Below are positions 7,458-63,914 of a stretch of DNA of 64,000 nt, piece after piece (the first letter of the stretch is position 1; each line of letters starts with the position of its first letter). The position numbers were made by a program, and so were the translations under genes. This DNA comes from Macrostomum hystrix (lineage: Eukaryota > Animalia > Platyhelminthes): the NCBI GenBank assembly GCA_950097015.1, contig CATNEN010000039.1:11966001-12030000 (forward strand). Direction: 5' to 3'. The notes under the pieces were generated by a model. It was not told the origin of the DNA. It saw only the letters and a list, made by a program, of their open reading frames with translations, and did no database searches.

Positions 7458-8090
7458 TTACAGCCTCTGACTGTGGGATTTACAGCCTCTGACTGTGGGA
7501 TTTACAGCCTCTGACTGTGGGATTTACAGCCTCTGACTGTGGGATTTACAGCCTCTGACTGTGGGATTTACAGCCTCTGACTGTGGGATTTACAGCCTCT
7601 GACTGTGGGATTTACTGCCTCTGACTGTGGGATTTACTGCCTCTGACTGTGGGATTTACAGCCTCTGACTGTGGGATTTACAGCCTCTGACTGTGGGATT
7701 TACAGCCTCTGACTGTGGGATTTACAGCCTCTGACTGTAGGATTTACAGCCTCTGACTGTGGGATTTACAGCCTCTGACTGTGGGATTTACAGCCTCTGA
7801 CTGTGGGATTTACAGCCTCTGACTGTGGGATTTACAGCCTCTGACTGTGGGATTTACAGTCTCTGACTGTGGGATTTACAGTCTCTGACTGTGGGATTTA
7901 CAGCCTCTGACTGTGGGATTTACAGTCTCTGACTGTGGGATTTACAGCCTCTGACTGTGGGATTTACAGCCTCTGACTGTGGGATTTACAGCCTCTGACT
8001 GTGGGATTTACAGCCTCGGACTGTGGGATTTACAGCCTCTGACTGTGGGATTTACTGCCTCTGACTGTGGGATTTACTGCCTCTGACTAG
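7458..8090. repeat. 22-bp minisatellite
   Basis: Unit TTTACAGCCTCTGACTGTGGGA. Confidence 0.95.
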
Positions 8091-41911: not shown

Positions 41912-42298
41912 ATGCCGAAGGTGCCACGTCGGTCCAACCTGAAGGGCAAGAAGAAGAGGCAGACTATCAAGTTCGTGCTGGACTGCACCCACCCTGTCGA
42001 GGATGGCATTATGGACGTGGCCAGCTTTGAGAAGTTTCTAACTGAGCGCATCAAGGTGCAGGGCAAGACTAACAATTTGCAGAATCTGGTCTCAGTTGCG
42101 CGGGACAAAAGCAAAGTGGTAGTCTCAGCTGAGATACCATTCTCCAAGCGCTACCTAAAGTACCTGACAAAGAAGTACCTGAAGAAGAATTCCCTTCGCG
42201 ACTGGCTCCGAGTTGTGGCCTCCAACCGGGAGACCTTCGAGCTGCGCTACTTCAACATCAATAGCGAGGACGCTGACGAAGATGCCGCTGAAGACTAA
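41912..42298 (+). CDS. RPL22: 60S ribosomal protein L22 (eL22), intronless
   Basis: [16 protein letters not shown]...[18 protein letters not shown]...[29 protein letters not shown]...FELRYFNI. Confidence 0.96.
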
Positions 42299-43170
42299 GT
42301 GTGGACTCTGACTGCGACTGTGTTGTTAGTTAGTTAGTTAGCCTGTTTCAAATTGAATACAAGCCGTATTTTGAGGCGCTATCGGCCCCCCGTTTGGTGC
42401 TTGAGCTTGGAAGGATGGCGGTGGATTAAATTCTAGCCGGTTGTCTTCGATTGACTTCACATTTTTTGCGATAACTCATTCGGCGAGTTTCAGTCGATCA
42501 ATTTGTCTGTAAAAGACAGCTCTCTGCCTCTTTGACGATGTTACCATTGGATGACAGAACGGATGCGAGACAGTGAAGCTGGCAGAATAAAAGCCACCGT
42601 TTTACGTCTTTCAGCAGAATTTTTTAGTCTATGGTCAATTAGCCGATTCTTAGCCAATAGATTTGAAGCTAATGGACTCTAATCGATCAACGATGAGCCG
42701 CCACCTGAAGTGCCACCGCCTCGTGTTGACATCAGTTGGTATTTAGGCGCTAATTCTGGGTAGAATTTGAGCTGAACTATTTCGATTAAATTGAATGGTT
42801 TCTTGACTAAATTTGCTGGCTATTTGAAGCGCGTATGATTGCTTTGACAGTTTATCAGTGATGGGATTAAATGGAAGCCTTCTATATAATGATTCATCCG
42901 GGATATGAATATAGAATTTTTCTGTCGATGTGTTGCCATGTGTTGCCTAACAGTATCTACTAATTACCAAAACGCAAAATTAAAACTCTAGGAGAGCTTT
43001 AAACCATTTTGTTAAGAGTTGATATTCCTAATTGCCTAAGCCTAAAGCAGCTTTAAAGTTTATAATTAAAAACAAAGCCAGCCTATACCGTGCAAATATC
43101 TCTGCGTGATATTCCGCCTCCATTTAGCTGCAGCATTATAAATAATTCACGAACACAAGTAATTGGCTTA

Positions 43171-43345
43171 TCATCATTTGTGCGCTTCTGTGGCTGCACC
43201 ACCGCCCACGGACTCGGGCACTTCGCCGAGCAGTCCAACTTCATCGGCAGGCTGGTCTGGGTCACCTTCCTGATGGGCACGTACAGCGGGTTCGCCTATC
43301 ACGTGTACACCCTGTTCGACTGGTTCATCCAGGCACCCGTGCTTC
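43171..43345 (+). pseudogene. DEG/ENaC exon-1 fragment (pre-TM1 and TM1), near-identical to 50425-50597
   Basis: SSFVRFCGCTTAHGLGHFAEQSNFIGRLVWVTFLMGTYSGFAYHVYTLFDWFIQAPVL; no ATG, missense changes versus the intact copy (Y>C, R>H, R>W), truncated on both sides. Confidence 0.85.
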
Positions 43346-43432
43346 AAACATCTGCAGTTTCGGCACGCCATGCCATAATCTCCAGATTTCCTAGTGTGCA
43401 TATTCATTCACCATCAGGACTCCATCTTCCGC

Positions 43433-46400: not shown

Positions 46401-47019
46401 GCCGTCTGCCGACGTGTACAAGAGGCTCCATCCGGCTCCAAGGTCCTCATTTTGAAGGCCTGGCTCCGCCACAATAGAGACCTCCTGCAGCATTATGAGG
46501 TCCAGCTGTAGGTCGTGGGCCAGCTGGACGAGCAGAGTGCGACGCCAGGGGGCCTTCAGGGTCCGGCAGTTCAGCGTGCCGAGCCTGAGGCGACCACCTG
46601 GTACGGCTAGGGCCCGATGACGTTGGGCCTCACGGTCCCCGGCGCCACCCGGCGGATCCGATTCAGAAGCGGCAGAGACCGGGGGCGACTGGCGTCTTGA
46701 AGCACCGCGAAGTCGCCCACGCCGGTTGCGCTCACGTCGCCGCTCAGTGCGACGGTGTGCGCTGCGCTGTCCTCTGCTCGTCCCTGATGTGCCTATTTAA
46801 TTTAGGCAATCTAATAATTAATTGCCTAATTAAATTTGTTTTACCGTACAGTATATTTCTAGAAACTTCCGGAAACACTAAAATACATTGTAAATATACT
46901 GCACCCGATCCAGCAATATTCAAAGCTTTTCTGATCTCATACGAGACTCAATAAACAATACAAAAAACCACCGCCTAGCTCTTAATTACTCGCGAACTCG
47001 CGACCACAAAACTGCTACA
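43433..47019 (+). mobile_element. Putative PPT plus 3' LTR remnant (about 430 bp) interrupted by the RTE LINE
   Basis: G9 tract at 43433-43441, then TGTAG at 43446 ... CTACA ending at 47019 (inverted termini), AATAAA near 46950; the 3' part recurs at 50012-50164. Confidence 0.5.
43676..46808 (-). mobile_element. RTE-clade non-LTR retrotransposon, near full-length APE endonuclease plus RT
   Basis: Frame open from about 46795: GTLNCRTL...MLQE, AYAPT, LGDLNA, LDHVLV, SDH (APE); KALGPDEVP, FVDFRKAFDSV, GLLQGDTLAPFLF, GYADD, FTYLG (RT). Frameshift near 43950 with the tail RRLRLAGHVIR continuing to TGA at 43729. (TTG)n tail; 13-bp TSD ATCTAATAATTAA at 43663-43675 and 46809-46821. Confidence 0.95.
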
Positions 47020-47177: not shown

Positions 47178-50011
47178 TGTTATGTCTTCTTCTTCTGTTT
47201 CAACGATGATTACTGCCTCAAGGCTATCATCGGACATCAAAGTCTAAGGCGAAGAAGCTATAGTTTATTGTACCGCAGTTCACGGCCTATAACTGCCTCT
47301 AGCAAGCGCACGCCAAGCACTTGCTTTTCGTGCTACAGATATTCGTCGGCTCTTAAAGAAATAAAAGATCCTACCCTAGACAATAGACATGCAGGAGGAA
47401 ACTCAAGTGCATTAGTAAAAGTCCATCTGGTATGTTGTCTATACATACTCGTAACATTCCCCCTTTTGTCAATTATAGTTTCTGTTTTGTCAGTTCTCCG
47501 CTTAACTATACTGTAAGCGATCCGGTCTTCTCAACTTGCTTCGATCTCTGTGTCCTTGTGCCCACGCCGTCTGCTCCAGGGTCAGCGTCATCCTTGTCTG
47601 TGTCCGCTGCCCGAGTCTCTCCTTGGCTTGGCACGTCTTGGACCGGTTGAGTTGATTCGTCCTCTCGCCGCTCTTGCTCTGTGGTAATTGGGTCGCTCTG
47701 AACTTCCCTAGGATCCTTCAGAATAGACGGTAGATGATGAGCTTCCGTCTTGTTGTGCCCAGGTAAATCTGCTCTGACGATTTGATCGACGTGTCGCTTC
47801 CAGACTTGTCCGTTGACCAACAATCGGTAGGACAGGGGTCCTGTGCGGGCGATCACCTTGGCAGAAATCCACCTGTTCTCTCGCTCCCTTCTGAAGTCCA
47901 ATGTCAGAACTGAGTCTCCTTCTTGAAATTCTCGTACAGATGATCCTCTTTCGTCTTGTCGTCCAGTGACATATGTCTGCTTGTTCAAGACTCTAGAGTA
48001 GGCATCCGGCTTGAGAAAGTCCAACTGTGTCCTGCGATTGTAGCATAGCATCATCTCTGCTGGTGTTCTACCGGTTGTTGAATGCGGTGTGCTGCGGTAG
48101 CGAAACAGGAAGTTCTGCATGCTCAATATTGGATCACCGTGAGTCTTAATTCCTGCTTTGATGGCAGACTTTGCTATTTGCACCATTCCTTCATTCAGTC
48201 CGTTGGTACGCGGATGTTCAATAGCTGTCAAAATCTGTCGAATATTATTCCGCTCCAAGAAAACACGGAACTCAGCTGAGCAGAACTGACTACCGTTGTC
48301 ACTCAACACTTGCTGTGGAATTCCAAACCGCGCTAACGTTTCCCGTAGTCAATCAATCGTCTTGCTTGTAGTTGCGTGCTTCATTGGAAAGATCTCAACC
48401 CATTTGCTTGTTGCATCGACCACGACGAGCCAATAGTATCCATGGAATGGTCCCATAAATTCCAGCTGAATCCTCGTCCATGGCTTTTCTGGCCACACCA
48501 AAGGCTGAATTGGCGCTTGTGCAGGCAGATTTCTCTGCAGCTGGCAGCCTTCACAACTTCGGACTAAGGTCTCAATAGACTTGTCTATTCCCGGGAACCA
48601 GACATGAAGTCTCGCAAGCGATTTCATGGCAACAATGCCAGGGTGTCCATCGTGAAGCAACTCCAGGACAACTTGCTGTACACTTCTCGGGATAACTACT
48701 CGCAAACCCCAGAATAGCACTCCTTGCTCAATGCACAGGTCGTTTCTCTTCCTGAAGTACTGTTCCAGGCTTGAGTCACAGGTCTCTGGCCAACCGTTCT
48801 GGCAGTAACGAACAACCTTCCGAAGATCAGCGTCCTTTTGAGTCTCGTTGCGAATCTTCTCCGCCGTGATTGGTAGCATTGCCAACCTGACCTGCAGTAG
48901 TTGATCGCTACGGATGCCCTTTTCTTGCACTGGCAGTCGTGAAAGAGCGTCGGCATTCGAATGATCTTCTGTCCTTCTGAACTTTATGGTGTACTTATGA
49001 GCTGAGAGTAGTACGGCCCAGCGCTGAAGTCTGCTTGCTGCGATGCTCGGAATGTCTTTCTTGTCTCCGAAGATGGTCAATAGCGGCTTATGATCAGTGA
49101 CTAGCACAAAGTGATGTCCAAATAAGTATTGATGGAACCGCTTCACTCCAAACACAATAGCCAACGCTTCCTTCTCTAGCTGAGAGTAGTTCACTTCTGG
49201 CTTGGAGAGTGTCCGCGAAGCGTATGCAACAGGCTTTTCACCATTCGGCATCATGTGAGATATGACAGCCGACTCCATACTTCGAAGCATGCGTTTGCAA
49301 AATAAGCTGCTTAGCTGGATCAAAATGTGCTAACACTCTGTCAGAAGTCAACGTGTCCTTCACCTTTTTAAATGCTGCACTGCACTCTTTACTCCAGTGA
49401 AAGTCAACATCCTTGCGTAACAATCTGTTCAGAGGAACCAGAATCTACGAAAGATTCGGAATGAACTTGGCGTAGTAATTTATCATTCCAATCAGAGATC
49501 TCACTTCGGTGACATTCGTTGGTTGTGGGGCTTCGTGAATTGCCACGACTTTCTCCTTCGATGGATGAATTCCATTTTCGTCTATGACGTAACCCAGAAA
49601 TTGAACCTTAGCAATTCGGAATTCGCACTTCTTCTTGTTCAGACGTACGCCATAGTCTGAGAGGCGTTCCAAAACAGCTTCCAACTTTTTGTCATGCTTC
49701 TCCAGACTCGTTCCAGACACCAAGATGTCATCTATGTAGACCACAACGTTCAAACCTTGCAAAATTTTCTCCATGGCTTCCTGAAATTGTGCAGGTGCTG
49801 ATGCCAGTCCCATTGTGAGTCTATTGTACTGGAACAGTCCGAGATGCGTGTTGATAGTTGCAAACTTTCTGCAGGCCTCTTCTAGTTCCAGCTGTTGAAA
49901 TGCTTGAGAGATGTCTAGCTTGGAGAAAATTCTTCCTCCATTCAGAGTAGCAAAGATTTCATCCGGGCGCGGCAGAGGGTATACTTGTCAACCTCCAGTT
50001 GGGGATTCAAA
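47178..50011 (-). mobile_element. 5'-truncated, degenerate Ty3/Gypsy LTR retrotransposon (RT-RNaseH-integrase plus 3' LTR)
   Basis: YPLP...FSKLD, VYIDDILV, YASRTLS...YSQLEKEALAIVFGVKRFHQYL, LHDGHPG...CEGC, SDNGSQF, RSTPHSTTGRTPAE in broken frames. PPT AAAAGGGGGAA adjacent to LTR 47178-47456 with TGTTA...TAACA termini. Confidence 0.93.
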
Positions 50012-50391: not shown

Positions 50392-53300
50392 ATGAGTAGT
50401 AGCGCGAAAGCCGATGCACCCAGCTCATCATTTGTGCGCTTCTGTGGCTACACCACCGCCCACGGACTCGGGCGCTTCGCCGAGCAGTCCAACTTCATCG
50501 GCAGGCTGGTCTGGGTCACCTTCCTGATGGGCACGTACAGCGGGTTCGCCTATCACGTGTACACCCTGTTCGACAGGTTCATCCAGGCTCCTGTGCTCAC
50601 CACAATGACGACGTCGACTCTACCGTTCCAATTCCCAGATGTGTACATCTGCCCTGCTCAAGCCGTCACTATGAGCAGAATCATTACAGCGCTATCCATC
50701 TCAGGCATAGACAATCTAGAACATTTAAATAAGCGGAGCATCAGCGAAAAGATTTCTCTCTACAGATTTGACGTGACGCGCAATCAAGACCTAAATGAAC
50801 CAACCAATGCGCTTCTGAATGTCCTACAGAGCAACGAGGAATCTTTGATGAAGACGCTTCAGTATCCTCTGAACGGTGAGTTTCCTATGGAATACTTGGG
50901 AAAGAAAAATATTCTTCTAACGTTTGAACAGTAGAAAGATAACGCTATTTTTACCTTGGCGAAAAACCACGCGTGGGTATTTCAAATACCCAATGCCACC
51001 TTCGCTCCCAAACCGAGTGACCGATTTTCGTCAGAGTCCGCCTTATGAACCAAAATTTTCCGCCCTTTACGATGTCAGCATTGTCGAGATTCTCATCGGT
51101 TCTTGTCGGAGACGCTGGCGACAAGGATAACTAGCATTGCTCTGTATAAACTTCTATCGCTAATCTATATTAACTAGTATTGATATATTACCCCCTCCTC
51201 CCTGGCAGTTTTTTTGCTGCACCCGAACGGAGCAACGCAAGCACACGAAACACGGGCCAACTTTTTGTTGCGCATCTTCTGAAACAAAAATTAAGTTACT
51301 AGCTCTTTAGACCGTCGAGATATTCAATGGTTCTGGCCGAAGGTCACACACCCCTATACATAAATTAGCACTGCGCCTCAGTGCGGCGAATGTGCCTGCA
51401 TCATCTCCGTCTTCGGTGGTCACCTACCTTTATCTAGACGGATTAGCTGGACCTTCAAGGGGTACAACAGGTGGAACTAGGCCACTATGGACACCCTGAC
51501 GCGAATTTCTCCAGTTTCAGACTGTCAACCAATCAGTCACCACCCAACGCTGTTAGCATTCAGGCGCTGCCAAAAAAATACGCGATCGCAAGATCGCTAA
51601 TCTGCTAGGTAGTTACTAATTCGAAAGTATAGAGAAAGAAAGGCAAGCCTACCCGGTTTTTGGGTTTATTTTTCAGAACCGTAATGCATTTTTAGTCGCG
51701 GAATAGGGTCCGTTTGGCGAAAATCGACAAACGAACTCTCGTATAAAAAAACTAATATAAAAAGATAAGCCTTTGATCCACCTTTAATTAAACACCGTCA
51801 CAAAAACCATGCAGCCTCCGTAACTTTTTCAAAAGAAATGTAGTTTTTCGTTCTACAGGCGTACCATTTATAAAAAACTTCAACCAGTAATTAAAGACTT
51901 CAGTCTTCATATTTTGGATGAACGAAAGAATGAACAATATGGAAAACCTCCGGCTGTCATTAAACAAAAGATTTCTGTTTTTCGGGCCTCGGGTGTAACG
52001 ACTGTCCATACGCTAAATTGAAAGTAATTAAAAGCACCCCCAGACCCCGGCAGTACCAGTCTGAGAGCCACCCCTAGACCCCGGCAGTACCAGTCTGAGA
52101 GCCACCCCTAGACCCCGGCAGTACCAGTCCGAGAGCCACCCCTAGACCCCGGCAGTACCAGTCCGAGAGCCACCCCTAGACCCCGGCAGTACCAGTCTGA
52201 GAGCCACCCCTAGACCCCGGCAGTACCAGTCCGAGAGCCACCCCTAGACCCCGGCAGTACCAGTCCGAGAGCCACCCCTAGACCCCGGCAGTACCAGTCT
52301 GAGAGCCACCCCTAGACCCCGGCAGTACCAGTCTGAGAGCCACCCCTAGACCCCGGCAGTACCAGTCCGAGAGCCACCCCTAGACCCCGGCAGTACCAGT
52401 CTGAGAGCCACCCCTAGACCCCGGCAGTACCAGTCCGAGAGCCACCCCTAGACCCCGGCAGTACCAGTCTGAGAGCCACCCCTAGACCCCGGCAGTACCA
52501 GTCTGAGAGCCACCCCTAGACCCCGGCAGTACCAGTCTGAGAGCCACCCCTAGACCCCGGCAGTACCAGTCTGAGAGCCACCCCTAGACCCCGGCAGTAC
52601 CAGTCTGAGAGTCACCCCCAGACACTCCAGTACCAGTCCGAGGGAACCTGTTCTTTGTCATTTCAATATTTAATTATTCTACGAGTATAATTAAAATATT
52701 AACTACAATTTTAGCTGATAAGCGTCAATGCCGAACTACGCCAAACGGAGAAGATTACACGGGGGACGCTCACTACGCGGCCGTCTACGGGTTCCCTAAT
52801 TTGACTGTCGAGGGTTCGAATCCGTCTAAATTTGAGCCTAGCCCATACCGGCAGCTCAGGCGGTGCATGAGTTGGAACGATGCCGCTCGGATGCTGAATC
52901 AGTCGTCTGTCGCTGTCAGTCTGGCTCACCGGCTGCTGTCACTTAACTTCTCCGACAGTGAGTCCAGGTGCCGCTCCCCGCCTGAACTGCCGCTAGCTGA
53001 GTTCCTTTCAGTCGCCTCGCGTAAGTTGAAAAGAAAACGAAAAATTAGCAGAATTTTCTCGAGCCCCTGCTTTTGAAATAAGTAGTGGTTTTAGACACGT
53101 GATTTTTATTGTAAGACTACCAAGCCATTTTACAAGATATTCGAGATATATATATTTCTGACCGAAGGTCACATTTTTCCCTTAAGAGCTAGTGTATTTA
53201 ACACGGATACACGAATTCACGCTGTGCCTCAGTGCGGCATTGCCAGGCCTTCAAAAGTTATCAGCACGTCACCCGAATAATGTGTGTGCATCGTCTCCCA

Positions 53301-56300
53301 CTTCGGTGGTCACCGATTTTCCACTAGACGGAGCTGCTGGACCTTCAAGATAAGGCGCCAGCCGACTATGAACACCCTGATGCAAATTTCTCCCATTTCG
53401 CTGATCAAGCCTCAATATTGGGCGAAGCTCAACCACAGGACCCCGCCTAGTCTGTCAACCAATCAGTCACCACCCAATTCCGTGAGCACCGTCAGCAGGG
53501 TGCCTCCAGCTGACTATGGGGTCCCTAAAGCGAATTTCTCCCATTTCGCTTATCTAGCCTTGATGTTGGGCTACACTCAATTACTTCTTGTTGAAGGTCC
53601 AGCAGCTCCGCCTAGATAAAGGTGACCACTGAATTCGCAGATGATGCAAGCATATTCTGATTATGTGCTGATAAAGTTTGAAGGCCTGGCAAGGCCGCAC
53701 CGAGGCGCAGTGCAAATTCGTGTAGAGGTGTGCATGAAATACACTAGCTCATATAGGAAAATAAGACCTTCTGCCAGAACCGTTGAATGTCTCGACGGTC
53801 TGAAGGGCTGGCAATTCTTGCTCCAGAAGATGCGCAGCAAAAGGTCGGCCCGTGCTCTTGAGTTTCGTGTGCTTGCATTCCTATGTTCGGGTGCAGCATA
53901 AATAATTGCCTGGGGGGAAATCCTCCCTTGGTACTTCTACTGTTTAAATTTTCTATGTCCAAAAGGTAAAAAATGTGCAGCAAACTCCGTGGGCGTAAAT
54001 GATGTTGGGAGCTTCAGAATTGATAAAGATGATTTCCGCTGATCTACGTAAATTGGGGCCTACTGGGGTCAGGGAAACAATGTCTTCGTTCTTCGCGGGC
54101 CTCTTTTACTAGACCTTGGTCCAGTCGCTCTTATCAGCTTATCGACTTGCTACTGAAGTTTAATAAACAAATTTTTAGGACCAATCTTTCAAAATGTCGG
54201 TTGTTTTCCGATTAACGTGACGGAATCGCCAGGCTTCAATTTCACATGCTACAAGCTGGGAATTAGCACAAATGAAGCTTGTGCCGAATGCTGCGACAAG
54301 CGCAATTTCCCGTTTATGGCGATCAGCTACCAGGACTGCTTCTGTGGCAACAGCATTGATGGATTCGAGAATGTCGCAGCCGTTTGTGATTCCTGCTCTA
54401 ACGACAACACGAAGCGATGCGGAATAAAGGACATAGCTGCAACTGTGCTTCGAATTCGTGATTTCGGTTAGTGTGGATCAGTTTTCATTTGAAATCGTTG
54501 GATCTACTTCTTAAGTTTGTCAGGACCTGCTAGTGAAACTGTTTATTCCAGATAACAAGCCGCTGCATATTGGGAATTCCAGCTTGCTTAGGTCTCTGTC
54601 TTATGGACCGTATTGCTTCTTCACTGACGAGCCAAGTGGCAGACTAAATGCTGGATTCTGTGACATTCCGTTCTGTCGTGAGTTCTACCTCATCGTTCGC
54701 TCTGAGCTCTTGGCCGCATTCATTTGTAACAACGAATATTTTGTTCGTTGATGTTCGCTGACCAAATTCGCTCTCATGTTTTACTTTTTCATGTTTGTTA
54801 TACTCGTAGTACGAGCTATGCTTCCTTGCAGAGAATCTGTTTGTTGCAACAAAATTTCATCACAATAACTATTACTAGCATTTTCGAACAACTACGATTG
54901 TGTCGTGAGTTCTGCAGACGAGTCAACGGAGCGTGGGTATCTGTCCCGATACGCAGGCCGGCTGAATGTATCTGCCTCGGGTAGGCAGTGCGCGCCTTGG
55001 AGTCGGGTGTCGACGATTGAAGAAAGCGTTGGTCGCTCTAGTAAGTTGATCTATTTTAACTTTTTTATTCAAAACTTCCAAGCTTAAAACTTACCATACC
55101 TAATAAAATATAGCTGAAATATAATTTCCGGGTGTCATTGGCTCGATCCCGGCTTCAGTTTCAGGAATGTATGGAAAATTGCACAAGGTTTACATCCAAA
55201 CTCCTGATGGCATAGAAAACACCACTGACAATTTCTGCCGACCAGTCACCATCGTTGTCGATGCTGACGATTACCGAGCGACATCAATGTTCGCGTGAGT
55301 AGCGCTGCATCCTTTCCAGGCTTTTCCATTTGATTTTTTCTTCTATATCAGAATTAATTCCAAAAATGTTCAGACGGTACACGGTGATCAACTCCGAAGT
55401 GCCGGTGTGTTTCACTGAAAACTTTCTAGTTCCCCGCACACCGGTTATATTCTACGTCGATGATTTGTTCAAACAGTCGTTTGAAACCTGCTCTGTGAAA
55501 AAGTGCTGTGAGTCTGTCTCTCTTTTTGTGACTGAAATTTGCAAAGTTTATTTTCTAAACAAAAATATGATACTTGTCAAGACCCTTTTGTGATACTGTT
55601 ATGTAAGATCTTCGCCGAAAATAAGTAGGTCATCACAATAGAGTAGGTTGTTGATTTCTTTATTCATTATATTGGTGTTAATGTGGAATTTAATATAGCA
55701 CTCAATGGGTCAATGTATATGGAAAATAGTTTTCGATTTGATTAGAAGACAATAATTTAAACCCTCTAATATGGTCATCGAGTTTACCGTAAATAATTAA
55801 TGCCAACAAACGTGCTGTCGCAGGTAGCACGTATTTTCGCAGCGTACTGTACAGAATAATGACTCTCTGCTTTAGACGAGGTAACTCCTAGCATCAAAGG
55901 CAGCGTCCGAGAGTCTGTTGGCAGCCACCTGCTGGCCAGACAGTTCGGCAGCGACCTGAGCGTCGGCCTCGCCGACTGCAGCTTCGCCAAACAAAAGTGC
56001 ACAGCCGAGCACTTTGTGAATGTCGCACATCCGCAGCTGGGCATGTGCCACCAGTTTCTGCAACAGAAGTTCACCCACAACATGACTAGCACGCAGGTGG
56101 CGGAGAGTGAGTTATCAATCAAGTACTTCACGGATGCCACTGACTCCGATGGTCAGACGGTGTCCAACATTGATAGGCTGACAGAAGCTGTTGCAGGCCA
56201 GCGAGCTGCTTCTGATGACTCCAGTAGGGTCGCCTTTAAGGTAAACGTTTTCTATCGTTTCTTTTCTTATTCAATCGTGAGCAGCATGCCTTTGTTGCGA

Positions 56301-59300
56301 TCTCGCAGGCGATCATCGTTCCTGAGAAAACTTTCCCTTGGGCCTCAAAGAGTGTTGACGTAGCTACTGCTCAGCGTTTGGATGTGCAGCTGAGATTTGA
56401 TAGGTATCTGAGACTCTCAACCGCTGGTAATCCTTGCCTGGAGACAACAGAAATGGTCACCTACCGACTGCCGTCCTGGACATTATCTCCGTCGAATGAA
56501 GAGACCAGGTTGGCTTTTTCTATTCCAAAACTACATTTTGCTTGCATTATTTCACAGGTTATTAATAGTTTTTGAACACAATTTCCTCAATATCAGCATC
56601 GATTTCGGCGCTAAAAATTTTGTCACAAGCAACTGGACTGAAAAGCTAAACAATTTCAGAAACATGCTGCTAAATAGTCCAAGGTCAGTCTGTTAATCAA
56701 TGTGCTACATTGCCAATCTGCCTGAAACAGCAGAAAAACCACTGGATTACTTTTGCGCCAAAATTTTTAGCGCCGAAGTCAACACAGAAACAGGACGTCC
56801 ATTCAGAATATACGATCGGGAGGACTGCATCAACAGCTATGTTGTCAAAAATTTCGTTCAGAGCTGCAACTGTCTCCCATCAATTCTGCCGATTCGGGAA
56901 GAACTGTTTTTGAACTATAGCTACTGCTTTGATTTGAATAAGGCAGGTTATATCACGGCCGCCACCGAGCAATGCTTCATCAACCAGGTGTTGAAGATCA
57001 CTGAGTATCGATTTGAGGCCCTAAATCTCTGCAAACCGCCCTGCAGTGTATTGGACTACAGCACACGATACGCAACTTATCCCTGGCCCAACTTGCTGAC
57101 TGCTAAGTCTCTTGATTTCATGGCAAATGCCGCATTCAACTACGGCTATCCGAGAAAAATCAGCGTGTTTAAAGGTGTCGCCAGCATCTATGCAACATAT
57201 CTGAGAGCTAAGAGACTCGCCGATACTCCTGTGAGTAACCGCAGCACGGAGGAGGTCCAGGGCTACAGTAATGAGCTGGAAGCCTTTCAGCACCGTCTGG
57301 CGCAGCTCAATGTCCAGGTGTGAAATTTGAGTTTGATTTTGAGCACTTATTATCATGTGATGACGATGCTAATTTTACTTGCTTTAATTAACGATAACAT
57401 AATCAGTTGGTGAACAAAGACCTATTGAGTCGAATTTAGTCATTAAACAAATTATTTTTAGCAAATTATACGTGTTGAGCATTGGGATGACATAAATATA
57501 AAATCTACGGCTAAGCGGTCAATTATTGACGTTATAAAATCTGATGTGTGTTATTAAGGAAGCGAAAGTCCTCAGCGCTTTTAATCAGCGCTTATCCTCC
57601 GATAATGCGCAAGCAGAGAAAGGACCAGCTGCTTAAATTTACCCTTAGACCTGGGGTCGGCGAACTCCAGCTCGCGGGCCAGATGCGGCCCTCGAAGCTC
57701 CGAAATCCGGCCCATTGAACCTTCCAACATCTACAGTATCCTGTCTCATATTTCACCTGTCTCATATTTCACTTGTCTTATCTCATCTCCGCGTCTATCT
57801 CATATTCTCATATTCCTAGGAGCGTACAGTCAATGTACATTCCCGCTGTCGTCTTCTAGGTTTTGGCCCGCAAGCTAATAGGTTTGCCGATCCCTGCCGT
57901 AGGCGAATGTCTAGGGAAAATACGGCATGACAATTTACATACGATTATAAAATAGCTCGTAGCACACTGCAAGAATACTATTACAAAATGAAAGCAATTA
58001 ACTCGTAGTAAAAGCATGCCATTACCCCACACAGGCGTATCGGTCTCGCGGTCAGGAGATCTCCGAGGAACCAGCCTATCCCGCCAAGAACCTGCTGGCT
58101 GACATCGGAGGTAAGCGAAACAATTGCTGACATGTGCTCTTTTTTCATAGAAAGACCACGGAGGAATTTCAAATCACCACATTCCTAGTTTTTCTGTATC
58201 TCCCAAATCTGTTCAATCAATGTATAAATAATCAGCGGTCCCAGTGCGTGACAACGAATTTTTTTACTCGCGCCTATCGCATTTCGCATTTTTATGAAAT
58301 TATGAAAACCTTCCCGTCGATTATCTACCAACGTCTGTCGGAGGGACGAATTATTGTCAGATTTTCTATGCTTTATTGAGGTAAAGAGGACGACAATACT
58401 CCACTGCCACCTGGATTCCAAGATGAGCTAAAGGAACTCGCTATTGAAATTGCCGATCTTCCTGTTAGCTCGCGGAGGCAGATGGACGCAACTTTCTGTA
58501 GTTCTTGAAGAGTCGTGGATTGACTACTGATCTAGGAAGAGTTGAATTATGACCAGTTAAACGTTTCAAACATGTTCGCTTCTGCTTCCTTTAACGTCTC
58601 AAACATACACCTAATCTGCTTCCTTCGCTGTTTTAAATATATCGTTAAAATAACGAAACCGAAGCGATGACAGGAGAAAAATAGCGACAACATTCTGTAT
58701 GCAATTATCCCCCTTTTTAATATTTGACAGGTGCTCTCGGGCTGTGGTCAGGAATCTCCATTCTCACGATCTGTGAGCTAATGGAACTCTTTCTCTACAT
58801 TGGCCGAGGTCTTGCCATGAGAGACGGAGACGGTGTTGCCAGGAGAGACGGAGACGGTGTTGCCAGGAGAGACGGAGACGGTGTTGCCAGGAGAGACGGA
58901 GACGGTGTTGCCAGGAGAGACGGAGACGGTGTTGCCAGGAGAGACGGAGACGGTGTTGCCAGGAGAGACGGAGACGGTGTTGCCAGGAGAGACGGAGACG
59001 GTGTTGCCAGGAGAGACGGAGACGGTGTTGCCAGGAGAGACGGAGACGGTGTTGCCAGGAGAGACGGAGACGGTGTTGCCAGGAGAGACGGAGACGGTGT
59101 TGCCAGGAGAGACGGAGACGGTGTTGCCAGGAGAGACGGAGACGGTGTTGCCAGGAGAGACGGAGACGGTGTTGCCAGGAGAGACGGAGACGGTGTTGCC
59201 AGGAGAGACGGAGACGGTGTTGCCAGGAGAGACGGAGACGGTGTTGCCAGGAGAGACGGAGACGGTGTTGCCAGGAGAGACGGAGACGGTGTTGCCAGGA

Positions 59301-59428
59301 GATACGGAGACGGTGTTGCCAGGAGAGACGGAGACGGTGTTGCCATGTCGACTGAAATTTCACTGCCACATTATGAGATGAGTGACATTTGCACGGAAGG
59401 AAGTGTGAAAGAAGTGAGCCGGTTTTAG
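50392..59428 (+). CDS. DEG/ENaC channel subunit with an extracellular kringle(WSC)-kringle insertion, 13 exons, about 1213 aa (paralogue 1)
   Basis: Exons 50392-50875, 52715-53020, 54179-54466, 54552-54677, 54879-55040, 55165-55294, 55374-55507, 55876-56240, 56309-56508, 56558-56683, 56771-57317, 58035-58110, 58731-59428; 3642 nt, GT-AG, one open frame (alternative ATG at 50371; exon 10 least certain). DEG/ENaC motifs FCGYTTAHG, TM1, FPDVYICP, DCSFAKQKC...HPQLGMCHQF, DC...SCNCLP...YC, CKPPC...YPWP, LLADIGGALGLWSGISILTICE. Confidence 0.88.
51195..51560 (+). repeat. Interspersed repeat (MITE-like arm) in channel intron 1
   Basis: GCTGCACCCGAAC...TGCGCATCTTCTG...CTGCGCCTCAGTGCGGC...TTCGGTGGTCACC...GCTGGACCTTCAAG; recurs direct at about 53160-53480 and inverted at about 53590-53917. 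Confidence 0.7.
52036..52640. repeat. 34-bp minisatellite in channel intron 1
   Basis: Unit CACCCCTAGACCCCGGCAGTACCAGTCTGAGAGC. Confidence 0.95.
53140..53917. repeat. Large imperfect inverted-repeat (foldback/MITE-like) element in channel intron 2
   Basis: Left arm GAAGGTC...CTGTGCCTCAGTGCGGC...CCAGGCCTTCAAA...GGAGCTGCTGGACCTTCAA; right arm TTGAAGGTCCAGCAGCTCC...TTTGAAGGCCTGG...GCCGCACCGAGGCGCAG...GACCTTC. Confidence 0.7.
57651..57896. mobile_element. Older hAT MITE copy, same family as 33207-33626
   Basis: CTGGGGTCGGCGAACT...GGTTTGCCGATCCCTG; flanks CCTTAGAC/CCGTAGGC (6 of 8 match); only 2-3 degenerate internal units. Confidence 0.8.
58820..59344 (+). repeat. Coding 24-bp tandem repeat (RRDGDGVA, about 22 copies) in the channel's cytoplasmic tail
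   Basis: Unit AGGAGAGACGGAGACGGTGTTGCC, in frame between TM2 and the stop at 59428. Confidence 0.9.
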
Positions 59429-60407
59429 TTTGAAAATGGTATAATTTACTCGTTGAAAATTGACAAAAATTGTTAGGTGACACGGGAGAGATAGGATACA
59501 GGAAAGATAAGAGAGTACATATAAGACAGGAATGGGATTTAGAAGCTTGCGGACTGCAGGTTGACGACCCCAGATCTACTTTGCAAGAAAGTATTGCCTT
59601 GCTTTCCTTATTTAGTAATTTAATAGACTTTGAATCTCGTAATTAACTCTGCTAATAATTTCATGAAGTTAATATTTTTTCGCCATGCTGTCAAAGCAGA
59701 TTTTTTAGAATTTTGATTTTGTTTCCTATTTATTTTTCTAAAGCTAATCTCGATTCGGAAACAGTTTCGCACTCATTCATCTATTTTTACGCTTGCTAGA
59801 AATTTCTGAGCTTTTGCAATTTTAATAAACAAAAAAATGTAATCTGGCCATTATAATTCGTCTAAAATTGCATTACACCACTCGTAAAAACGGACAATGT
59901 CTTTTTATAAATTTTGTTTCAATTATTTGCGGCAAGATTCGATAATTTCGGGGTGGGATTTACACCTGAGATTTCTACTTGAAAATCAACAGAGACGAAG
60001 TCCCGTAATCCCAATAGTATTTTATTTGTACGAGTTCAGAACTATGGGAACGGTTTTCAAATGCGATAACGAAAAATGTTTAAAAACTGAGCTTTAAAAA
60101 CTCACCCTACTTTATTTCATTCCTATCATCACAATATACTATCGTTTGCATCATTCCACTCCATTCCGTTTAGGAACCTGGGCCTGATCTATGCGTAGAT
60201 ATGCCTGATCAATCATTCAATTGAGCATAAGCATAGGCTGAGTTGACTTGCATCCCATCTGTATTATATTTTTATTGCCATCACCCAACTGGACAGTGGG
60301 ATGTGGTCATTGAAAATAAACTCAGTTAATAATTGCTTCCTCACGGTAAAATATATACCCATGTTTCTGGCTAACGAAACCGCTTGGGAAGCACTAACGA
60401 ACAAATC

Positions 60408-63400
60408 ATGAACAGCCGTTCCTCTGTCTATGTGCCACTGCTGAAGCAGTTCTGTGGCTACACGACTGCTCACGGACTGGGCAGATTCTCTGAGCAGTCC
60501 AACCTCATCGGCAGGCTGATCTGGGTCACCTTCCTGATGGGCACGTACAGCGGGTTCGCCTATCACGTGTACACCCTGTTCGACAGGTTCATCCAGGCTC
60601 CTGTGCTCACCACAATGACTGTGTCGACGCTGCCATTCCAATTCCCGGATGTGTACATCTGTCCTGCAACTTCAGTGACTATGAGTAGGGTCATTCGGCA
60701 ATTATCCTTCGCGGATATAGACTATGTCGAGTCTAGTCGCGGGAATACTATAGAAGAAAAGCTTCTTACCTACGCTTTCGATATCACTGATTACAAACAC
60801 CTCAGTTTATCGGTGAATGCGCCCACGAAGGCTCTGCTAAATGTCCTACAGAGCACAGAGGAATCACTAATGGCTGAATTTCAATTTCCACCTGATGGTG
60901 AGTAGGCAAAATCAGTCATTTTATACCCTTATAAGTTTTTGTACACTTACATGCAAATCACTCCATAAAACAGTCAGCAGAAGCGAGTGCCGCACCACAA
61001 TGTCAGGACAAGAGTACACAGGCAACGCGAGCTCCGCGTTCGTCTACGGATTCTCATCTTTGTCGGTCAAGTCTGTGAACACTTCCGCCTTCGTGCCCAG
61101 TCCCTACAGGGAGCGCAGGCGGTGCATGAGTTGGAACGATGCCGCAAGGATGCTGAATCAGTCGTCTGTCGCTGTCAGCCTGGCTCACCGGCTGCTGTCA
61201 CTCAACTTCTCCGACAGCGAGTCCAGGTGTCGCTCTCCGCCTGGACTGCCCCTGTCCGAATTCTTCACGATTGCCTCGCGTGAGTTTACAAATAAAATCA
61301 TCAGTAGCCAGTACTTTATAGGAGACATGTGTCACTTACGTGGGAATTGATTTCCATACATCCGTGTTGAAAGGGGTCTGTGGCAGAGCGGTTAAGGTGT
61401 TTGCCTCTCGCGCCAAGGTCCCTGAGCTTGATTCCGCGGCGAGGCCACATTTACTTGGGGCGTAGAGGCGAAGAGAAGGCTTTGGGGGGCATGTCGTGCA
61501 ATCGACGCCCTTGAGAGCCAACCTCCAAGGCACCCCCAAGTAAGAGTACACACTACATGACGATGAGAAAGCCAGGGGCAGATGAACACACCTGTGTGAG
61601 CGTACGCCCTGCGTACGGTATCTGTTTGTGCTCGGGAGTCAGCGAAATGGAGCTGAATTGGCTCCTCGCTGGCTGCGGGTCTAGGGTCACCAAATGATGT
61701 GCCATAGCCCGCAGCCCTCCTGCAGTTATTATGATTATTATCCGTGTTGAATCGTCTTGTGGCGTCTTGGATGTATCAGGGGCTCTCGGCCAGAATCGCA
61801 ATATGTGCTCGTGATTGGTTGTTGTGTTCATGTTGTTTTTATTGCTCATCCCAATACCAGCGCAGTTGTTAAAAACTCCCTTTAATTCTACGTACAGGTC
61901 CCATGTTCAAAAATGTTGGCTGCTTACCAAAGAAATTACTGCAGACTGATCGTTTCAACTTTACCTGCTTCAAAAATGGCCTCGGCAACCAAGAAGCCTG
62001 CGCGGAATGCTGTGACAAGCACAATTTCCTCTATTTAGGAATCAGTTATAGTGACTGCTATTGCGGCAGCAGTATCATCGGATTTGAGAACAGCTCAGAG
62101 ATCTGCGACAGCCTTTGTAAGAACGACGCGAAGAACTGCGGCTCCGAATCTGCTGTTACAGTTCTGCAGATAAGGGACACTGGTTCGTAATCTTCCTGTT
62201 TTCCTATCCGTAAAGTTCAATTGTAAAGTGCAAAGTGCAAAAGTGCGAAACCGTTTACTATATGTAACCTCATTTATCAAGGTATCAATATTTTAGTTTG
62301 CTGAAACAACCACTCGAAGGTCATAAAACAGTTTCTTACTCGTAGAAAAAGTTATGGAGGCTGGTTTTCGCCGAAAAGTGCACTATGGAGCTTAAAAAAC
62401 TCTCTTATTCTGTTAAAATTCAGTGACTGTGTTTGTTTCCATATTTAGACATTTATCGATTTTTTTCAAGCTATATTTTTTAAGCATCAAATTCATATTT
62501 TAATTTTTTCTGCATCAAGCTCCAGAAACAAAACAAAGCCACTCGAAAAACATATATATATTTAATTGTTGAAAAATGGAGGTTGTAGCCTAGTGTTTAG
62601 GGCATCGGACTCACGACCTGAAGGTCGGGGATTCGATTCCCGACTCCACTGAAACAATTTGTGTCCTTTAGCAAGACACTTAACTCTGCATTGCTTCAGT
62701 TCACCCAGCTGTTAAATGGGTACCAGCATTAGCTGGTATAATTGAAGGTGGATGTGGCGTCCCCCCAGTCCATGGACTGAACAGCTGTACGCAGGAAGCA
62801 GCCTTATTGCTGAGGAGCGGGAGTGCGTCTGGGCCGAACGGGCTCAGCGTCTCGACGCCAAATGGGCGGATGTCAGCGTACTTGGCAGCTGCTGCGGCGG
62901 CACGAGGGCCAACAGCAGAGGCGTGCAGGTGACTTGGGGCGCAGGTGCGAGTGACTTTCGCGTCCCAGGCCAACGGCAAACCCCAGCTCGAACGCCACCA
63001 CAGTGACGCCGTCGAACCGGCGGCAGTCGCTCCCTCCCAAGAAAGAAATTAGCATTTTGTTTTTTCTGTGGCGGATATTGTTTAAATATTTCGAGTTGTC
63101 TGCGTAGACGTTGTTTGTGTTATTATTAACGGACAAGTAAAAAATAGTCTCAAGAGTTGGGCAAATTAAATGAAAAAGAACAGCTTTGGATTTTTCGTAT
63201 ATTTTTTCTAAAAAGTTTCCCGTCCTTCCACTCCTAGTGGAAGGTCCTCGTTTCTTCGTCAGACAGAAATAACCAGCACGTGTGACTTTCTCATTACACA
63301 GACAGCCGGCCATTGCACATCGGAAACTTCAGCCAGTTGACAGCCTTTTCTAGTGGACCATACTGCTTCTTCACCGAGCAGGAGAGTGGCAGGCTCAGCG

Positions 63401-63914
63401 CTGCCTTCTGCAATATACCCTACTGTCGTGAGTAGTAGGCTAGTAGTTGTAGGCTAATAATTAAGATATCGCTGGTTTGTCTGTCTCAACTCCCTTCGCA
63501 CCATGCCCTCCCCCGACCGTGCATTCCGGCCTTTCCCCTTGCGTTTCAGTGGCAATAGATGGGCTTAGGGGCTGATGGTAGGGCTTCGAAGCCCTTACCC
63601 TACCCTGGGTTTTGAGTAGGTCCTTGTTCTAACAAGCAGGCGCTTATTTGATCTAGCAAGAATAAATTCTTGGTTCAAATCACATATTTTATTTTAATCA
63701 TTTTCTCTATAGTTCGCTTCAACAATAAACACAAATCATTCAGCGATTTCAAAGGACTACGATTGCATAGTGAGTTCGGAGGACAAGTCCACTGAGCAGT
63801 TGACACGGTCTCGCTACACCGGTCGGCACAATGTCACCAACACCGGTCGTCAGTGTATGCCTTGGAGTCGCGTGCGAAACATTCAGGCCGACATTGTCGC
63901 AAAGCACAGACATA
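60408..63914 (+). CDS. DEG/ENaC kringle(WSC)-kringle channel, paralogue 2; partial, continues beyond the window
   Basis: Exons 60408-60897, 60974-61279, 61898-62182, 63302-63427, 63744-63914; same intron positions and phases as paralogue 1. FCGYTTAHG, FPDVYICP, CRTTMSGQEYTG...CMSW...CRSP, WSC exon, GPYCFFT...FCNIPYC, YDCIVS...RYTGRHNVTNTGRQCMPW. Confidence 0.88.
61373..61740 (+). mobile_element. SINE family A in paralogue-2 intron 2
   Basis: GGGGTCTGTGGCAGAGCGG...GCTTGATTCC...GCCCGCAGCCCTCCTGCAGTTATT. Confidence 0.85.
62577..62740 (+). mobile_element. tRNA-derived SINE (family B) with CORE-like body
   Basis: tRNA-like head TAGCCTAGTG...GATTCGATTCC followed by TGTGTCCTTTAGCAAGACACTTAAC and CACCCAGCTGTTAAATGGGTACC; 3' boundary uncertain. 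Confidence 0.7.

What the first reader, a model, noticed from the sequence alone, without database searches (positions are those of the whole stretch)
50392..63914. Tandem DEG/ENaC channels carrying a Kremen-like kringle/WSC ectodomain cassette
Seen: after TM1 and FPDVYICP, and before the conserved DCSF..C...HP.LG.C segment (the variable finger region), about 380 aa are inserted. They read as kringle 1 (CRTTPNGEDYTG...RRCMSW...SRCRSP...GPYCFFT...FCDIPFC), a WSC domain (NVGCF...EACAECC...FMAISYQDCFCGNS...VCDSC...RCG...TVLRI) and kringle 2 (DCVV...RYAGRLNVSASGRQCAPW...NFCRP...PVCFT...FETCSVKKC). The HG gating motif, thumb cysteines and TM2 GG-LGLW-GIS filter are intact. A second paralogue repeats the architecture with identical intron positions and conserved cysteines, so this is unlikely to be a chance join. 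Established: kringle plus WSC is the Kremen ectodomain pairing; WSC binds glycans and occurs in polycystin-1 and fungal wall sensors; the finger region confers ligand or protease gating; other extra-domain DEG/ENaCs exist (C. elegans EGAS with EGF repeats). Inference: a receptor-channel family gated by protein or glycan ligands, or tethered to matrix for mechanosensing. I do not know of a described channel with this architecture.
Basis: partly seen in the sequence, partly recalled or inferred. Interest (0 to 1): 0.92.

Follow-up and report, generated by a model that had tools for sequence, protein, structure and literature searches.

The report
Sodium channels with kringle-WSC-kringle arm
Two neighbouring flatworm genes encode DEG/ENaC-type sodium channels whose outer "finger" carries an extra arm of about 384 residues (a kringle split by a WSC domain, then a second kringle). 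I found no paper describing this design, and its role is untested.

Summary
Gene 1 (50392-59428, 13 exons) and gene 2 (from 60408, running off the window) are DEG/ENaC genes: Pfam ASC is above cut-off, and the HG motif and TM2 are intact. Six extra exons (384 codons) sit in the finger region.

- **WSC exon:** passes Pfam's cut-off.
- **Kringles:** both fail Pfam's cut-off. Profile-profile alignment to this genome's own kringles supports them, and a predicted fold of kringle 2 from a Macrostomum lignano homologue matches only kringles at the top of the list.
- **Order:** the WSC exon lies inside kringle 1, between Cys3 and Cys4. This is not the serial Kremen order, and there is no CUB domain.

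All outer boundaries of the cassette are phase 1. Gene 1 and gene 2 share only exon sequence (dN/dS about 0.2). The genome holds 11 such loci. The only database relatives are uncharacterised M. lignano proteins built from RNA-seq transcripts, and they carry the same joined order.

No RNA could be checked for this species, and the nested kringle 1/WSC fold could not be modelled. Function (ligand-binding or tethering arm) is inference. No paper describes the design. The scan found the same family earlier on other pieces of this genome. I class it as a new variant of a known kind.

The parts
50392..50875 (+). Gene 1 exon 1: start codon, HG motif (TAHGLG), TM1, FPDVYICP, first finger helices. The donor is phase 1.
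   Evidence: Pfam ASC 2.9e-15, profile positions 1-124. Aligns to FaNaC1 residues 8-89. Donor |GTGAGT.
52715..53020 (+). Gene 1 exon 2: N-part of kringle 1 (Cys1-Cys3, with a 23-residue insertion after the Y-x-G motif). Phase 1-1.
   Evidence: hhalign of the family's E2 against this genome's kringles: P 1.1e-5, kringle positions 1-59. hmmsearch. Strong splice sites. Invariant C, G, Y, G, C, W, C, R.
54179..54466 (+). Gene 1 exon 3: a complete WSC domain on one phase 1-1 exon, lying between the two halves of kringle 1.
   Evidence: Pfam WSC 35.1 bits, cut-off 27.8. The family profile hits the Kremen1 WSC at 1e-7 and yeast Wsc1 at 3.5e-8. I chose donor 54466 because it fits the length of the M. 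lignano homologues.
54552..54677 (+). Gene 1 exon 4: C-part of kringle 1 (GPYCFF...FCDIPFC, Cys4-Cys6). Phase 1-1.
   Evidence: hhalign P 2.4e-4, kringle positions 63-81. Strong acceptor and donor.
54879..55040 (+). Gene 1 exon 5: kringle 2, part 1 (Cys1, Y-x-G, Cys2-x-x-W).
   Evidence: hmmsearch with this genome's kringle HMM, E 6.1e-5. hhalign P 1.8e-7. Pfam Kringle is sub-threshold at 15.6 bits. Donor |GTAAGT.
55159..55294 (+). Gene 1 exon 6: kringle 2, part 2 (IQTPD...NFCRP, Cys3). An alternative acceptor lies 6 nt downstream at 55165.
   Evidence: Splice contexts. Maps to P0024 residues 464-497.
55374..55507 (+). Gene 1 exon 7: kringle 2, part 3 (PVCFT...FETCSVKKC, Cys4-Cys6). The donor is phase 1.
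   Evidence: Maps to P0024 residues 508-551. The homologous M. lignano module folds as a kringle.
55876..56240 (+). Gene 1 exon 8: the channel resumes (GSHLLARQF...DCSF..C...HPQLGMC).
   Evidence: In the family profile this segment aligns to FaNaC residues 192-238. 70% identical to P0024.
56309..56508 (+). Gene 1 exon 9: channel ectodomain (IIVPEKTFPW...).
   Evidence: 68% identical to P0024 residues 672-737.
56597..56676 (+). Gene 1 exon 10: a small exon. Its donor is the weakest site of the model.
56731..57317 (+). Gene 1 exon 11: cysteine-rich part of the ASC domain (Pfam profile positions 289-389).
   Evidence: Pfam ASC 1.2e-10. Maps to P0024 residues 765-950.
58035..58110 (+). Gene 1 exon 12: the pre-TM2 segment, ending LLADIG(G).
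   Evidence: 76% identical to P0024 residues 951-975. Donor GAG|GTAAGC.
58731..59428 (+). Gene 1 exon 13: TM2 (ALGLWSGISILTICELMEL), a cytoplasmic tail holding a 24-bp x 22.4 in-frame array (58808-59345), then the stop codon.
   Evidence: TM2 aligns to FaNaC TM2.
60408..60897 (+). Gene 2 exon 1 (ASC N-terminus and TM1).
   Evidence: 74% amino-acid identity to gene 1 exon 1, dN/dS 0.24. Donor |GTGAGT, phase 1.
60974..61279 (+). Gene 2 exon 2 (N-part of kringle 1). 306 nt, as in gene 1.
61898..62182 (+). Gene 2 exon 3 (WSC).
   Evidence: 55% identical to gene 1 exon 3. Phase 1-1.
63302..63427 (+). Gene 2 exon 4 (C-part of kringle 1). 126 nt, as in gene 1.
63744..63914 (+). Gene 2 exon 5 (kringle 2, part 1). 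The remaining exons lie beyond the window's end.
   Evidence: hmmsearch E 2.4e-5.. Continuation shown.

Best explanation
These are two tandem members of a DEG/ENaC channel subfamily found so far only in Macrostomum flatworms.

Shown:
- The channel core looks intact: N-terminal HG motif, TM1, cysteine-rich ectodomain, and a TM2 with GLWxGxS.
- Six extra exons interrupt the finger region at the place that matches residues about 175-192 of Aplysia FaNaC.
- Those exons encode a disulfide-rich arm of about 384 residues. It is a divergent kringle with a whole WSC domain inserted between its third and fourth cysteines, followed by a second divergent kringle with enlarged loops.
- The arm is under purifying selection and is kept in three subfamilies that are older than the split from M. 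lignano.

Inferred:
- The arm was assembled by exon shuffling, because every outer boundary is phase 1 and the WSC domain is a single phase 1-1 exon.
- The proteins form trimeric sodium channels with three such arms projecting from the top of the ectodomain.
- The arm works as a built-in binding module for a glycan or protein. It either modulates or gates the channel through the finger, or anchors it to extracellular material.
For: - ASC and WSC pass Pfam cut-offs exon by exon.
- The closest solved relatives are FaNaC, ENaC and ASIC, and TM2 aligns residue for residue with FaNaC.
- Kringle evidence: the E2, E4 and E5 exons of all paralogues are the top hits of a kringle HMM built from this genome's own kringles, each in the correct register.
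- hhalign gives P 1.1e-5 for E2, 2.4e-4 for E4 and 1.8e-7 for E5.
- An AF2 model of the kringle 2 module of M. lignano (P0012, pLDDT 73) has kringles as its top 18 matches among 48,161 chains. Z is 4.4-5.9, with 71-79 residues aligned.
- The gene model has strong GT/AG sites and compatible phases. The coding sequence is 0 mod 3 and colinear with P0024.
- Constraint: only exons are conserved between gene 1 and gene 2, and dN/dS is about 0.2.
- There are 11 loci with the same exon order.
- Three subfamilies are shared with M. lignano.
- M. lignano GenBank proteins with the joined order come from RNA-seq-built transcripts.
Against:
- Because all cassette boundaries are phase 1, skipping the whole cassette or only the WSC exon would stay in frame.
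- Both kringles fail Pfam's gathering score, even in the contiguous M. lignano proteins.
- The only model spanning kringle 1 and WSC was unusable (pLDDT 38), so the nested fold is not shown.
- Gene 1 carries a 22-copy minisatellite in its tail, which could be a sign of decay.
- No functional data exist.
Confidence: 0.7

Rival explanations
1. The cassette, or only its WSC exon, is an optional alternatively spliced module. The main product would then be an ordinary channel made by joining exon 1 directly to exon 8, and the long form would be a minor or tissue-specific isoform.
For: All cassette units have phase 1 boundaries, so any skip keeps the frame. Some M. lignano predictions lack parts of the cassette: P0009 lacks the C-half of kringle 1, and P0023 lacks part of kringle 2.
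Against: No database protein joins exon 1 to exon 8. The short M. lignano entries are C-terminal fragments, not skipped forms. The RNA-based full-length models P0015, P0007, P0011 and P0024 all include the whole cassette. The cassette is under purifying selection in 11 paralogues.
Confidence: 0.15
2. The proteins no longer conduct ions. The DEG/ENaC scaffold would serve only as a membrane anchor for an adhesion or receptor ectodomain.
For: Extra-domain DEG/ENaCs of C. elegans (EGAS-1 to EGAS-4) gave no currents in oocytes (PMC10424705). Three other M. lignano DEG/ENaCs did not respond to the peptides tested (PMC9234716).
Against: The HG motif, pre-TM2 and the TM2 selectivity motif are conserved and align with FaNaC. 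The channel exons are the best conserved parts, at 68-80% identity to M. lignano.
Confidence: 0.1
3. The cassette exons belong to a separate gene nested in a large intron of the channel gene, or the loci are decaying pseudogenes.
For: One paralogue (C25, locus L008) has an in-frame TAG in exon 2. A degraded third copy lies just beyond the window. Gene 1's tail holds a minisatellite.
Against: The cassette has no start codon, signal-peptide exon or stop codon of its own. It lies on the same strand with matching phases. M. lignano transcripts join it to the channel. All 13 exons of gene 1 are free of stops, with dN/dS about 0.2.
Confidence: 0.04

Closest known systems
FMRFamide-gated sodium channel (FaNaC) and other DEG/ENaC channels (ENaC, ASIC, Pickpocket)
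   Same: Pfam ASC domain, HG motif, two transmembrane helices and a TM2 with the GLWxGxS motif. FaNaC is the best solved match (1.3e-18). The extra sequence sits in the finger. From general knowledge, not tested here, the finger binds FMRFamide in FaNaC and carries the protease-cleaved inhibitory tract in ENaC.
   Different: About 384 extra residues of kringle/WSC/kringle replace a stretch of about 17 residues in FaNaC. None of the solved channels matched gave a kringle or WSC match. The genes have 13 exons, whereas most of this genome's more than 100 ASC genes are intronless.
C. elegans EGAS-1 to EGAS-4 (EGF plus ASC domain ion channels)
   Same: DEG/ENaC subunits that carry additional extracellular protein modules (PMC10424705).
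   Different: The modules are of a different kind (EGF, against kringle and WSC) and in a different phylum. I did not check where the EGF repeats sit relative to the finger.
Kremen1/2 ectodomain (Kringle-WSC-CUB)
   Same: Kringle and WSC domains occur in one ectodomain. The family's WSC matches the Kremen1 WSC at 1e-7, and the Kremen1 kringle is among the fold matches of kringle 2 (Z 4.1-4.7).
   Different: The order is nested, not serial: kringle N-part, WSC, kringle C-part, then a second kringle. No CUB domain was found. Yeast Wsc1 matches the WSC slightly better than Kremen does. Nothing points to common descent.
Uncharacterised Macrostomum lignano proteins: PAA86857.1, PAA82974.1, PAA47210.1, BOX15_Mlig006056g1, UniProt A0A1I8IYW4 and others
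   Same: Same family and same architecture. P0024 (BOX15_Mlig006056g1) is 39-80% identical exon by exon and lies in the same clade as the window's two genes.
   Different: They come from a different species: the window's ribosomal protein eL22 is 92% identical to that of M. lignano. They are annotated only as hypothetical, 'WSC domain-containing' or 'amiloride-sensitive sodium channel' proteins.

Membership tests
DEG/ENaC (Pfam ASC, PF00858) | Match to the ASC profile above the gathering score | tested here: met
   Exon 1 scores 56.7 bits and exon 11 scores 41.4 bits, against a cut-off of 23.6. The M. lignano homologues score 76-131 bits.
DEG/ENaC (Pfam ASC, PF00858) | N-terminal HG motif, two transmembrane helices, and a TM2 with the G/S-x-S filter | tested here: met
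   The sequence reads TAHGLG, a TM1, and DIGGALGLWSGISILTICELMEL. TM2 aligns with FaNaC TM2.
DEG/ENaC (Pfam ASC, PF00858) | Forms a trimeric, sodium-conducting, amiloride-sensitive channel | not testable with these tools
   This needs expression and electrophysiology.
WSC domain (PF01822) | Match above the gathering score, with the conserved cysteines | tested here: met
   Exon 3 scores 35.1 bits, against a cut-off of 27.8. The family profile hits the Kremen1 WSC at 1e-7 and Wsc1 at 3.5e-8. The cysteines are invariant across homologues.
Kringle domain (PF00051) | Match above Pfam's gathering score | tested here: not met
   The best score is 15.6 bits on exon 5 and 18.9 bits in the contiguous protein P0002, against a cut-off of 34.3. 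PDB kringles are hit only at E about 0.02.
Kringle domain (PF00051) | Six cysteines in kringle order, with the G-x-x-Y-x-G, C-x-x-W, (N)xCRxP and GP(W/Y)C(Y/F) motifs | tested here: met
   The motifs are present and conserved in both modules. hhalign against this genome's own kringles gives P 1.1e-5 for E2 (positions 1-59), 2.4e-4 for E4 (positions 63-81) and 1.8e-7 for E5.
Kringle domain (PF00051) | Kringle fold | tested here: inconclusive
   For kringle 2 of the M. lignano homologue P0012, the top 18 matches among 48,161 chains are all kringles (Z 4.4-5.9, 71-79 residues aligned). Foldseek's best E-value is only 0.32. The window's own kringle 2 was not folded because it is split over three exons. 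For kringle 1 with the nested WSC, the model was unusable (pLDDT 38).
Kremen family | Serial Kringle-WSC-CUB ectodomain on a single-pass membrane protein | tested here: not met
   The WSC is nested inside kringle 1. No CUB match appears in any exon or homologue. The membrane part is a two-helix channel.

The most novel reading that the evidence does not exclude
The kringle[WSC]-kringle arm is the channel's own receptor. Binding of an extracellular glycan or protein (mucus, matrix, prey or mate surface), or pulling on such an attachment, would be passed through the finger to open the pore. That would make this the first DEG/ENaC gated by a macromolecular ligand or by a built-in extracellular tether.
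Probability: 0.2. Interest if true: 0.85.

Novelty: new variant of a known kind. Interest (0 to 1): 0.6.

Why it matters
The finger is the part of DEG/ENaC channels that sets what opens them: peptide, protons or protease. Here evolution has grafted a large binding-type module onto exactly that part and has kept it through many duplications.

If the arm gates or tethers the channel, it would give a natural, genetically tractable example of how these channels are coupled to extracellular partners. That question is still open for touch-sensing channels.

The close relative M. lignano has a published transgenesis method (PMC5730564) and carries direct homologues, so the idea can be tested.

The WSC exon nested in a disulfide-closed kringle loop is also a clean case of a domain inserted into a domain by exon shuffling.

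Tried and rejected
- **Joined model.** I did not search or fold a joined spliced model of the window's genes. Exons were searched one by one by reference. The sum of exon lengths and the exon-by-exon alignment to P0024 stand in for it.
- **Nested fold.** AF2 of P0002 (652 aa, spanning kringle 1, WSC and kringle 2) gave pLDDT 38 and was discarded.
- **Foldseek.** The kringle 2 model gave no match at E <= 0.001.
- **ESM Atlas.** No usable hit.
- **Exon 8 against the PDB.** No hit on its own.
- **Profile of exon 2.** Searched against 1.84 billion representatives, it found only M. lignano proteins plus three low-complexity false hits: P0005, P0008 and P0010.
- **Cassette of P0015.** Searched against 5.8 billion proteins, it again found only M. 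lignano.
- **A false exon.** An 'EELNY' stretch at 58536 looked like the pre-TM2 motif. I rejected it because the true pre-TM2 exon is 58035-58110.
- **Weaker splice choices.** 53000/54592, 55027/55188 and 54457 were rejected on site strength and on fit to the homologues.
- **Other ASC loci.** I fetched three other ASC loci reported with very long open frames (L011-L013). My own scan did not reproduce those frames, and I dropped the matter.
Full report
**What is in the sequence**

The + strand between 50392 and 59428 holds a 13-exon gene, gene 1. A second copy, gene 2, starts at 60408 and runs off the window's end.

I scanned the stop-free stretches one by one, by reference, against Pfam:
- Exon 1: ASC, 56.7 bits, profile positions 1-124.
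- Exon 11: ASC, 41.4 bits, positions 289-389.
- Exon 8 and the TM2 exon: weaker ASC matches.
- Exon 3: WSC, 35.1 bits, above the 27.8 cut-off.
- Exon 5: Kringle, only 15.6 bits, well below the 34.3 cut-off.

The HG motif (TAHGLG), TM1, FPDVYICP, the DCSF...C...HPQLGMC segment and a TM2 reading DIGGALGLWSGISILTICELMEL are all present.

**Gene model**

I chose the GT/AG sites by phase, by site strength and by fit to homologues. The exons are:

| Exon | Coordinates |
|---|---|
| E1 | 50392-50875 |
| E2 | 52715-53020 |
| E3 | 54179-54466 |
| E4 | 54552-54677 |
| E5 | 54879-55040 |
| E6 | 55159 (or 55165)-55294 |
| E7 | 55374-55507 |
| E8 | 55876-56240 |
| E9 | 56309-56508 |
| E10 | 56597-56676 |
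| E11 | 56731-57317 |
| E12 | 58035-58110 |
| E13 | 58731-59428 |

- The exon lengths sum to 3639 nt, which is 0 mod 3.
- Every exon aligns to consecutive segments, abutting or at most about 10 residues apart, of the M. lignano protein P0024, at 39-80% identity.
- E10's donor is the weakest site in the model.
- The cassette exons E2-E7 total 1152 nt, or 384 codons.
- The boundaries E1/E2, E2/E3, E3/E4, E4/E5 and E7/E8 are all phase 1.
- All searches used single exons by reference, or database proteins.

**The cassette**

*Kringle 1 is split by the WSC exon.*
- E2 carries kringle Cys1, the G-x-x-Y-x-G motif, Cys2-x-x-W and the CRxP cysteine (Cys3).
- E4 carries GPYCFF...FCDIPFC (Cys4-Cys6).
- The complete WSC exon E3 lies between them, in the loop that the Cys3-Cys4 disulfide closes in a canonical kringle.
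- E5-E7 encode a second kringle-like module with long loops.

*Pfam does not accept the kringles, even in contiguous M. lignano proteins, so I tested them three other ways.*

1. I built an HMM from 12 canonical kringles of this same genome and searched it against 2,877 six-frame stretches of the window and eight paralogous loci. Its top hits were almost all E5, E2 and E4 exons. Each matched the expected part of the profile: E5 at positions 5-35, E2 at 1-17 plus 22-60, and E4 at 62-86. Unrelated stretches first appeared at E about 0.2-0.5.
2. Profile-profile alignment (hhalign) gave these results:

| Exon family | P-value | Kringle positions matched |
|---|---|---|
| E2 | 1.1e-5 | 1-59 |
| E4 | 2.4e-4 | 63-81 |
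| E5 | 1.8e-7 | 7-30 |

3. I modelled the 144-residue kringle 2 module of an M. lignano homologue (P0012) with AF2, using the family alignment (pLDDT 73). Against 48,161 representative chains, its 18 best matches were all kringle proteins, including uPA, factor XII, HGF, plasminogen, prothrombin, ROR2 and Kremen1. Z was 4.4-5.9, with 71-79 residues aligned at about 3 Å. Unrelated rows below them aligned only about 43 residues. Foldseek ranked a kringle first, but at E 0.32.

The model meant to show kringle 1 with its nested WSC failed (P0002, pLDDT 38). The nested fold therefore rests on sequence alone.

The family profile matches the WSC domains of yeast Wsc1 (3.5e-8) and Kremen1 (1e-7).

**Where the cassette sits in the channel**

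- In the family profile, positions 24-129 align to Aplysia FaNaC residues 65-175.
- Positions 554-602 align to FaNaC residues 192-238.
- The cassette therefore replaces a stretch of about 17 residues in the finger region.
- FaNaC is the closest solved relative (1.3e-18), followed by ENaC, ASIC5 and Pickpocket.

**Evidence that this is not a chance join**

- blastn of gene 2 against gene 1 finds only exons, at 70-88% identity. The introns have diverged beyond detection.
- dN/dS is 0.20-0.24 for E1, E2 and E5. In E3 and E4 the synonymous sites are saturated, while pN is 0.19-0.28.
- Gene 2 has the same phases and nearly the same exon lengths in the window.
- Gene 2 continues beyond the window with all remaining exons, but there the E11/E12 intron is absent.
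- The genome (220 Mb, 42 contigs) holds 11 loci with an E2-like exon:
  - three on the window's contig;
  - five in a tandem row on contig C25, one of them with an in-frame TAG;
  - two on C8;
  - one on C30.
- The ten loci fetched around a WSC match, the window's two included, keep their cassette exons in the same order (E2, WSC, E4, E5; one lacks a detected E2 and E5 inside the fetched stretch) at 30-45% identity, and four of the eight further loci also show an exon 1 match.

**Relatives elsewhere**

- A profile of E2 searched against 1.84 billion representative proteins found only seven true hits, all from Macrostomum lignano.
- The cassette of P0015 searched against 5.8 billion proteins again found only M. 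lignano.
- The full-length entries (1033-1091 aa) have the order TM1, kringle 1 N-part, WSC, kringle 1 C-part, kringle 2, then the rest of the channel.
- According to PMC5730564, the GenBank annotation of that genome was made from an RNA-seq-built transcript assembly. The joined form is therefore supported by transcripts in the sister species.
- The short entries in the same clusters are C-terminal fragments, not cassette-skipping forms.
- A tree of the kringle 1 N-part shows three subfamilies, each holding loci of this genome and M. lignano proteins. The window's two genes are sisters of each other (96/96). They lie in a 97/97 clade with P0024, P0003 and P0015, unresolved among them; P0024 is the nearest by path length.
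- The window's ribosomal protein eL22 (41912-42298) is 92% identical to that of M. lignano. The organism is therefore a close relative, not M. lignano itself.

**Origin**

- This genome has more than 150 WSC exons, mostly in giant tandem arrays.
- It has about 28 kringle matches.
- It has more than 100 ASC matches, most of them spanning nearly the whole profile in one open frame, so those genes look intronless.
- A phase 1-1 WSC exon dropped into a phase 1 intron of a kringle, and that unit placed into a channel gene, fits classical exon shuffling.
- Nothing ties the cassette to Kremen beyond the two domain types. The order differs and no CUB domain was found.

**Function**

This part is inferred, not shown.
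- The channel exons are the best conserved parts (54-80% identity to M. lignano) and the pore motifs are intact, so a working channel subunit is the most likely reading.
- The arm is cysteine-rich and lies in the extracellular loop between TM1 and TM2.
- It sits on the finger. From general knowledge, not tested here, the finger binds peptide in FaNaC and holds the protease-sensitive tract in ENaC.
- A built-in binding or tethering module that modulates gating is therefore my best guess.
- Optional splicing of the cassette cannot be excluded.

**Literature**

- Searches for ENaC or degenerin together with kringle or WSC found no paper on such a channel.
- The FaNaC comparative paper tested three other M. 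lignano DEG/ENaCs (Mlig049925, Mlig051885, Mlig041003), not these.

**Earlier notes of this scan**

Other agents reported the same family on other pieces of this genome, and the nested WSC as well. I treated those notes as leads. My own tests agree with them. One note says a paralogue is transcribed, which I could not check.

**Limits**

- I only observed the retroelements upstream of gene 1.

**Verdict**

It is a new variant of a known channel family, already present in databases as unnamed predicted proteins, and described in no paper I could find. Its function is unknown.

Noticed in passing
window 58808-59345: A 24-bp array of 22.4 copies at 99% identity lies inside the last coding exon of gene 1. 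It adds about 180 residues of RDGDGVAR repeats to the cytoplasmic tail. All three frames are open through it, so the open frame alone does not show that it is tolerated. The M. lignano homologue P0015 has only two degenerate units there.
   Followed up: partly
window 43090-43533 (+): A partial duplicate of gene 1's exon 1 (FVRFCG.TTAHGL.HFAEQSNFIGRLVWVTFLMGTYSGFAYHVYTLFD). It loses similarity after TM1 and has no downstream exons. It is separated from gene 1 by retroelements.
   Followed up: partly
window 43929-46493 (-) and 47506-49813 (-): An 854-residue open frame that reads like the reverse transcriptase/endonuclease of a non-LTR retrotransposon. Next to it are frames that read like the integrase and reverse transcriptase/RNase H of an LTR-type element. 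That element is flanked by repeated stretches near 46.9 kb and 50.0 kb, and ends about 300 bp before gene 1's start codon. These labels come from reading the translations; no family search was run, and the elements were observed only.
   Followed up: no
window 41912-42298 (+): An intronless gene for ribosomal protein eL22, 92% identical to that of Macrostomum lignano. I used it to place the organism.
   Followed up: yes
window 1-52700, e.g. 2041-2662, 7458-8088, 15550-16559, 17055-18078, 52035-52642: The window is unusually rich in minisatellites: more than 15 arrays with periods of 15-45 bp and 10-65 copies each. One of them is a 34-bp x 17.9 array in intron 1 of gene 1.
   Followed up: no
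L024 (G000:C39:12029001-12039000) and L025, beyond the window's end: Gene 2 is complete there but lacks the intron between exons 11 and 12. About 2 kb further on, on the minus strand, lies a degraded third copy. It keeps kringle 2 and channel exons but has lost the N-terminus, the kringle 1 N-part and the WSC exon.
   Followed up: partly
own genome, e.g. G000:C1:8.45-8.50 Mb, C7:5.91-5.94 Mb, C39:10.68-10.70 and 12.92-12.94 Mb: A massive expansion of WSC-domain exons: more than 150 scored and 436 candidates, in long tandem arrays. The genome also has more than 100 ASC (DEG/ENaC) matches, most of them spanning nearly the whole profile in one open frame.
   Followed up: no
L008 (G000:C25:5184142-5184411): One member of the five-gene row on contig C25 has an in-frame TAG in its kringle 1 exon. 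It may be a pseudogene.
   Followed up: no
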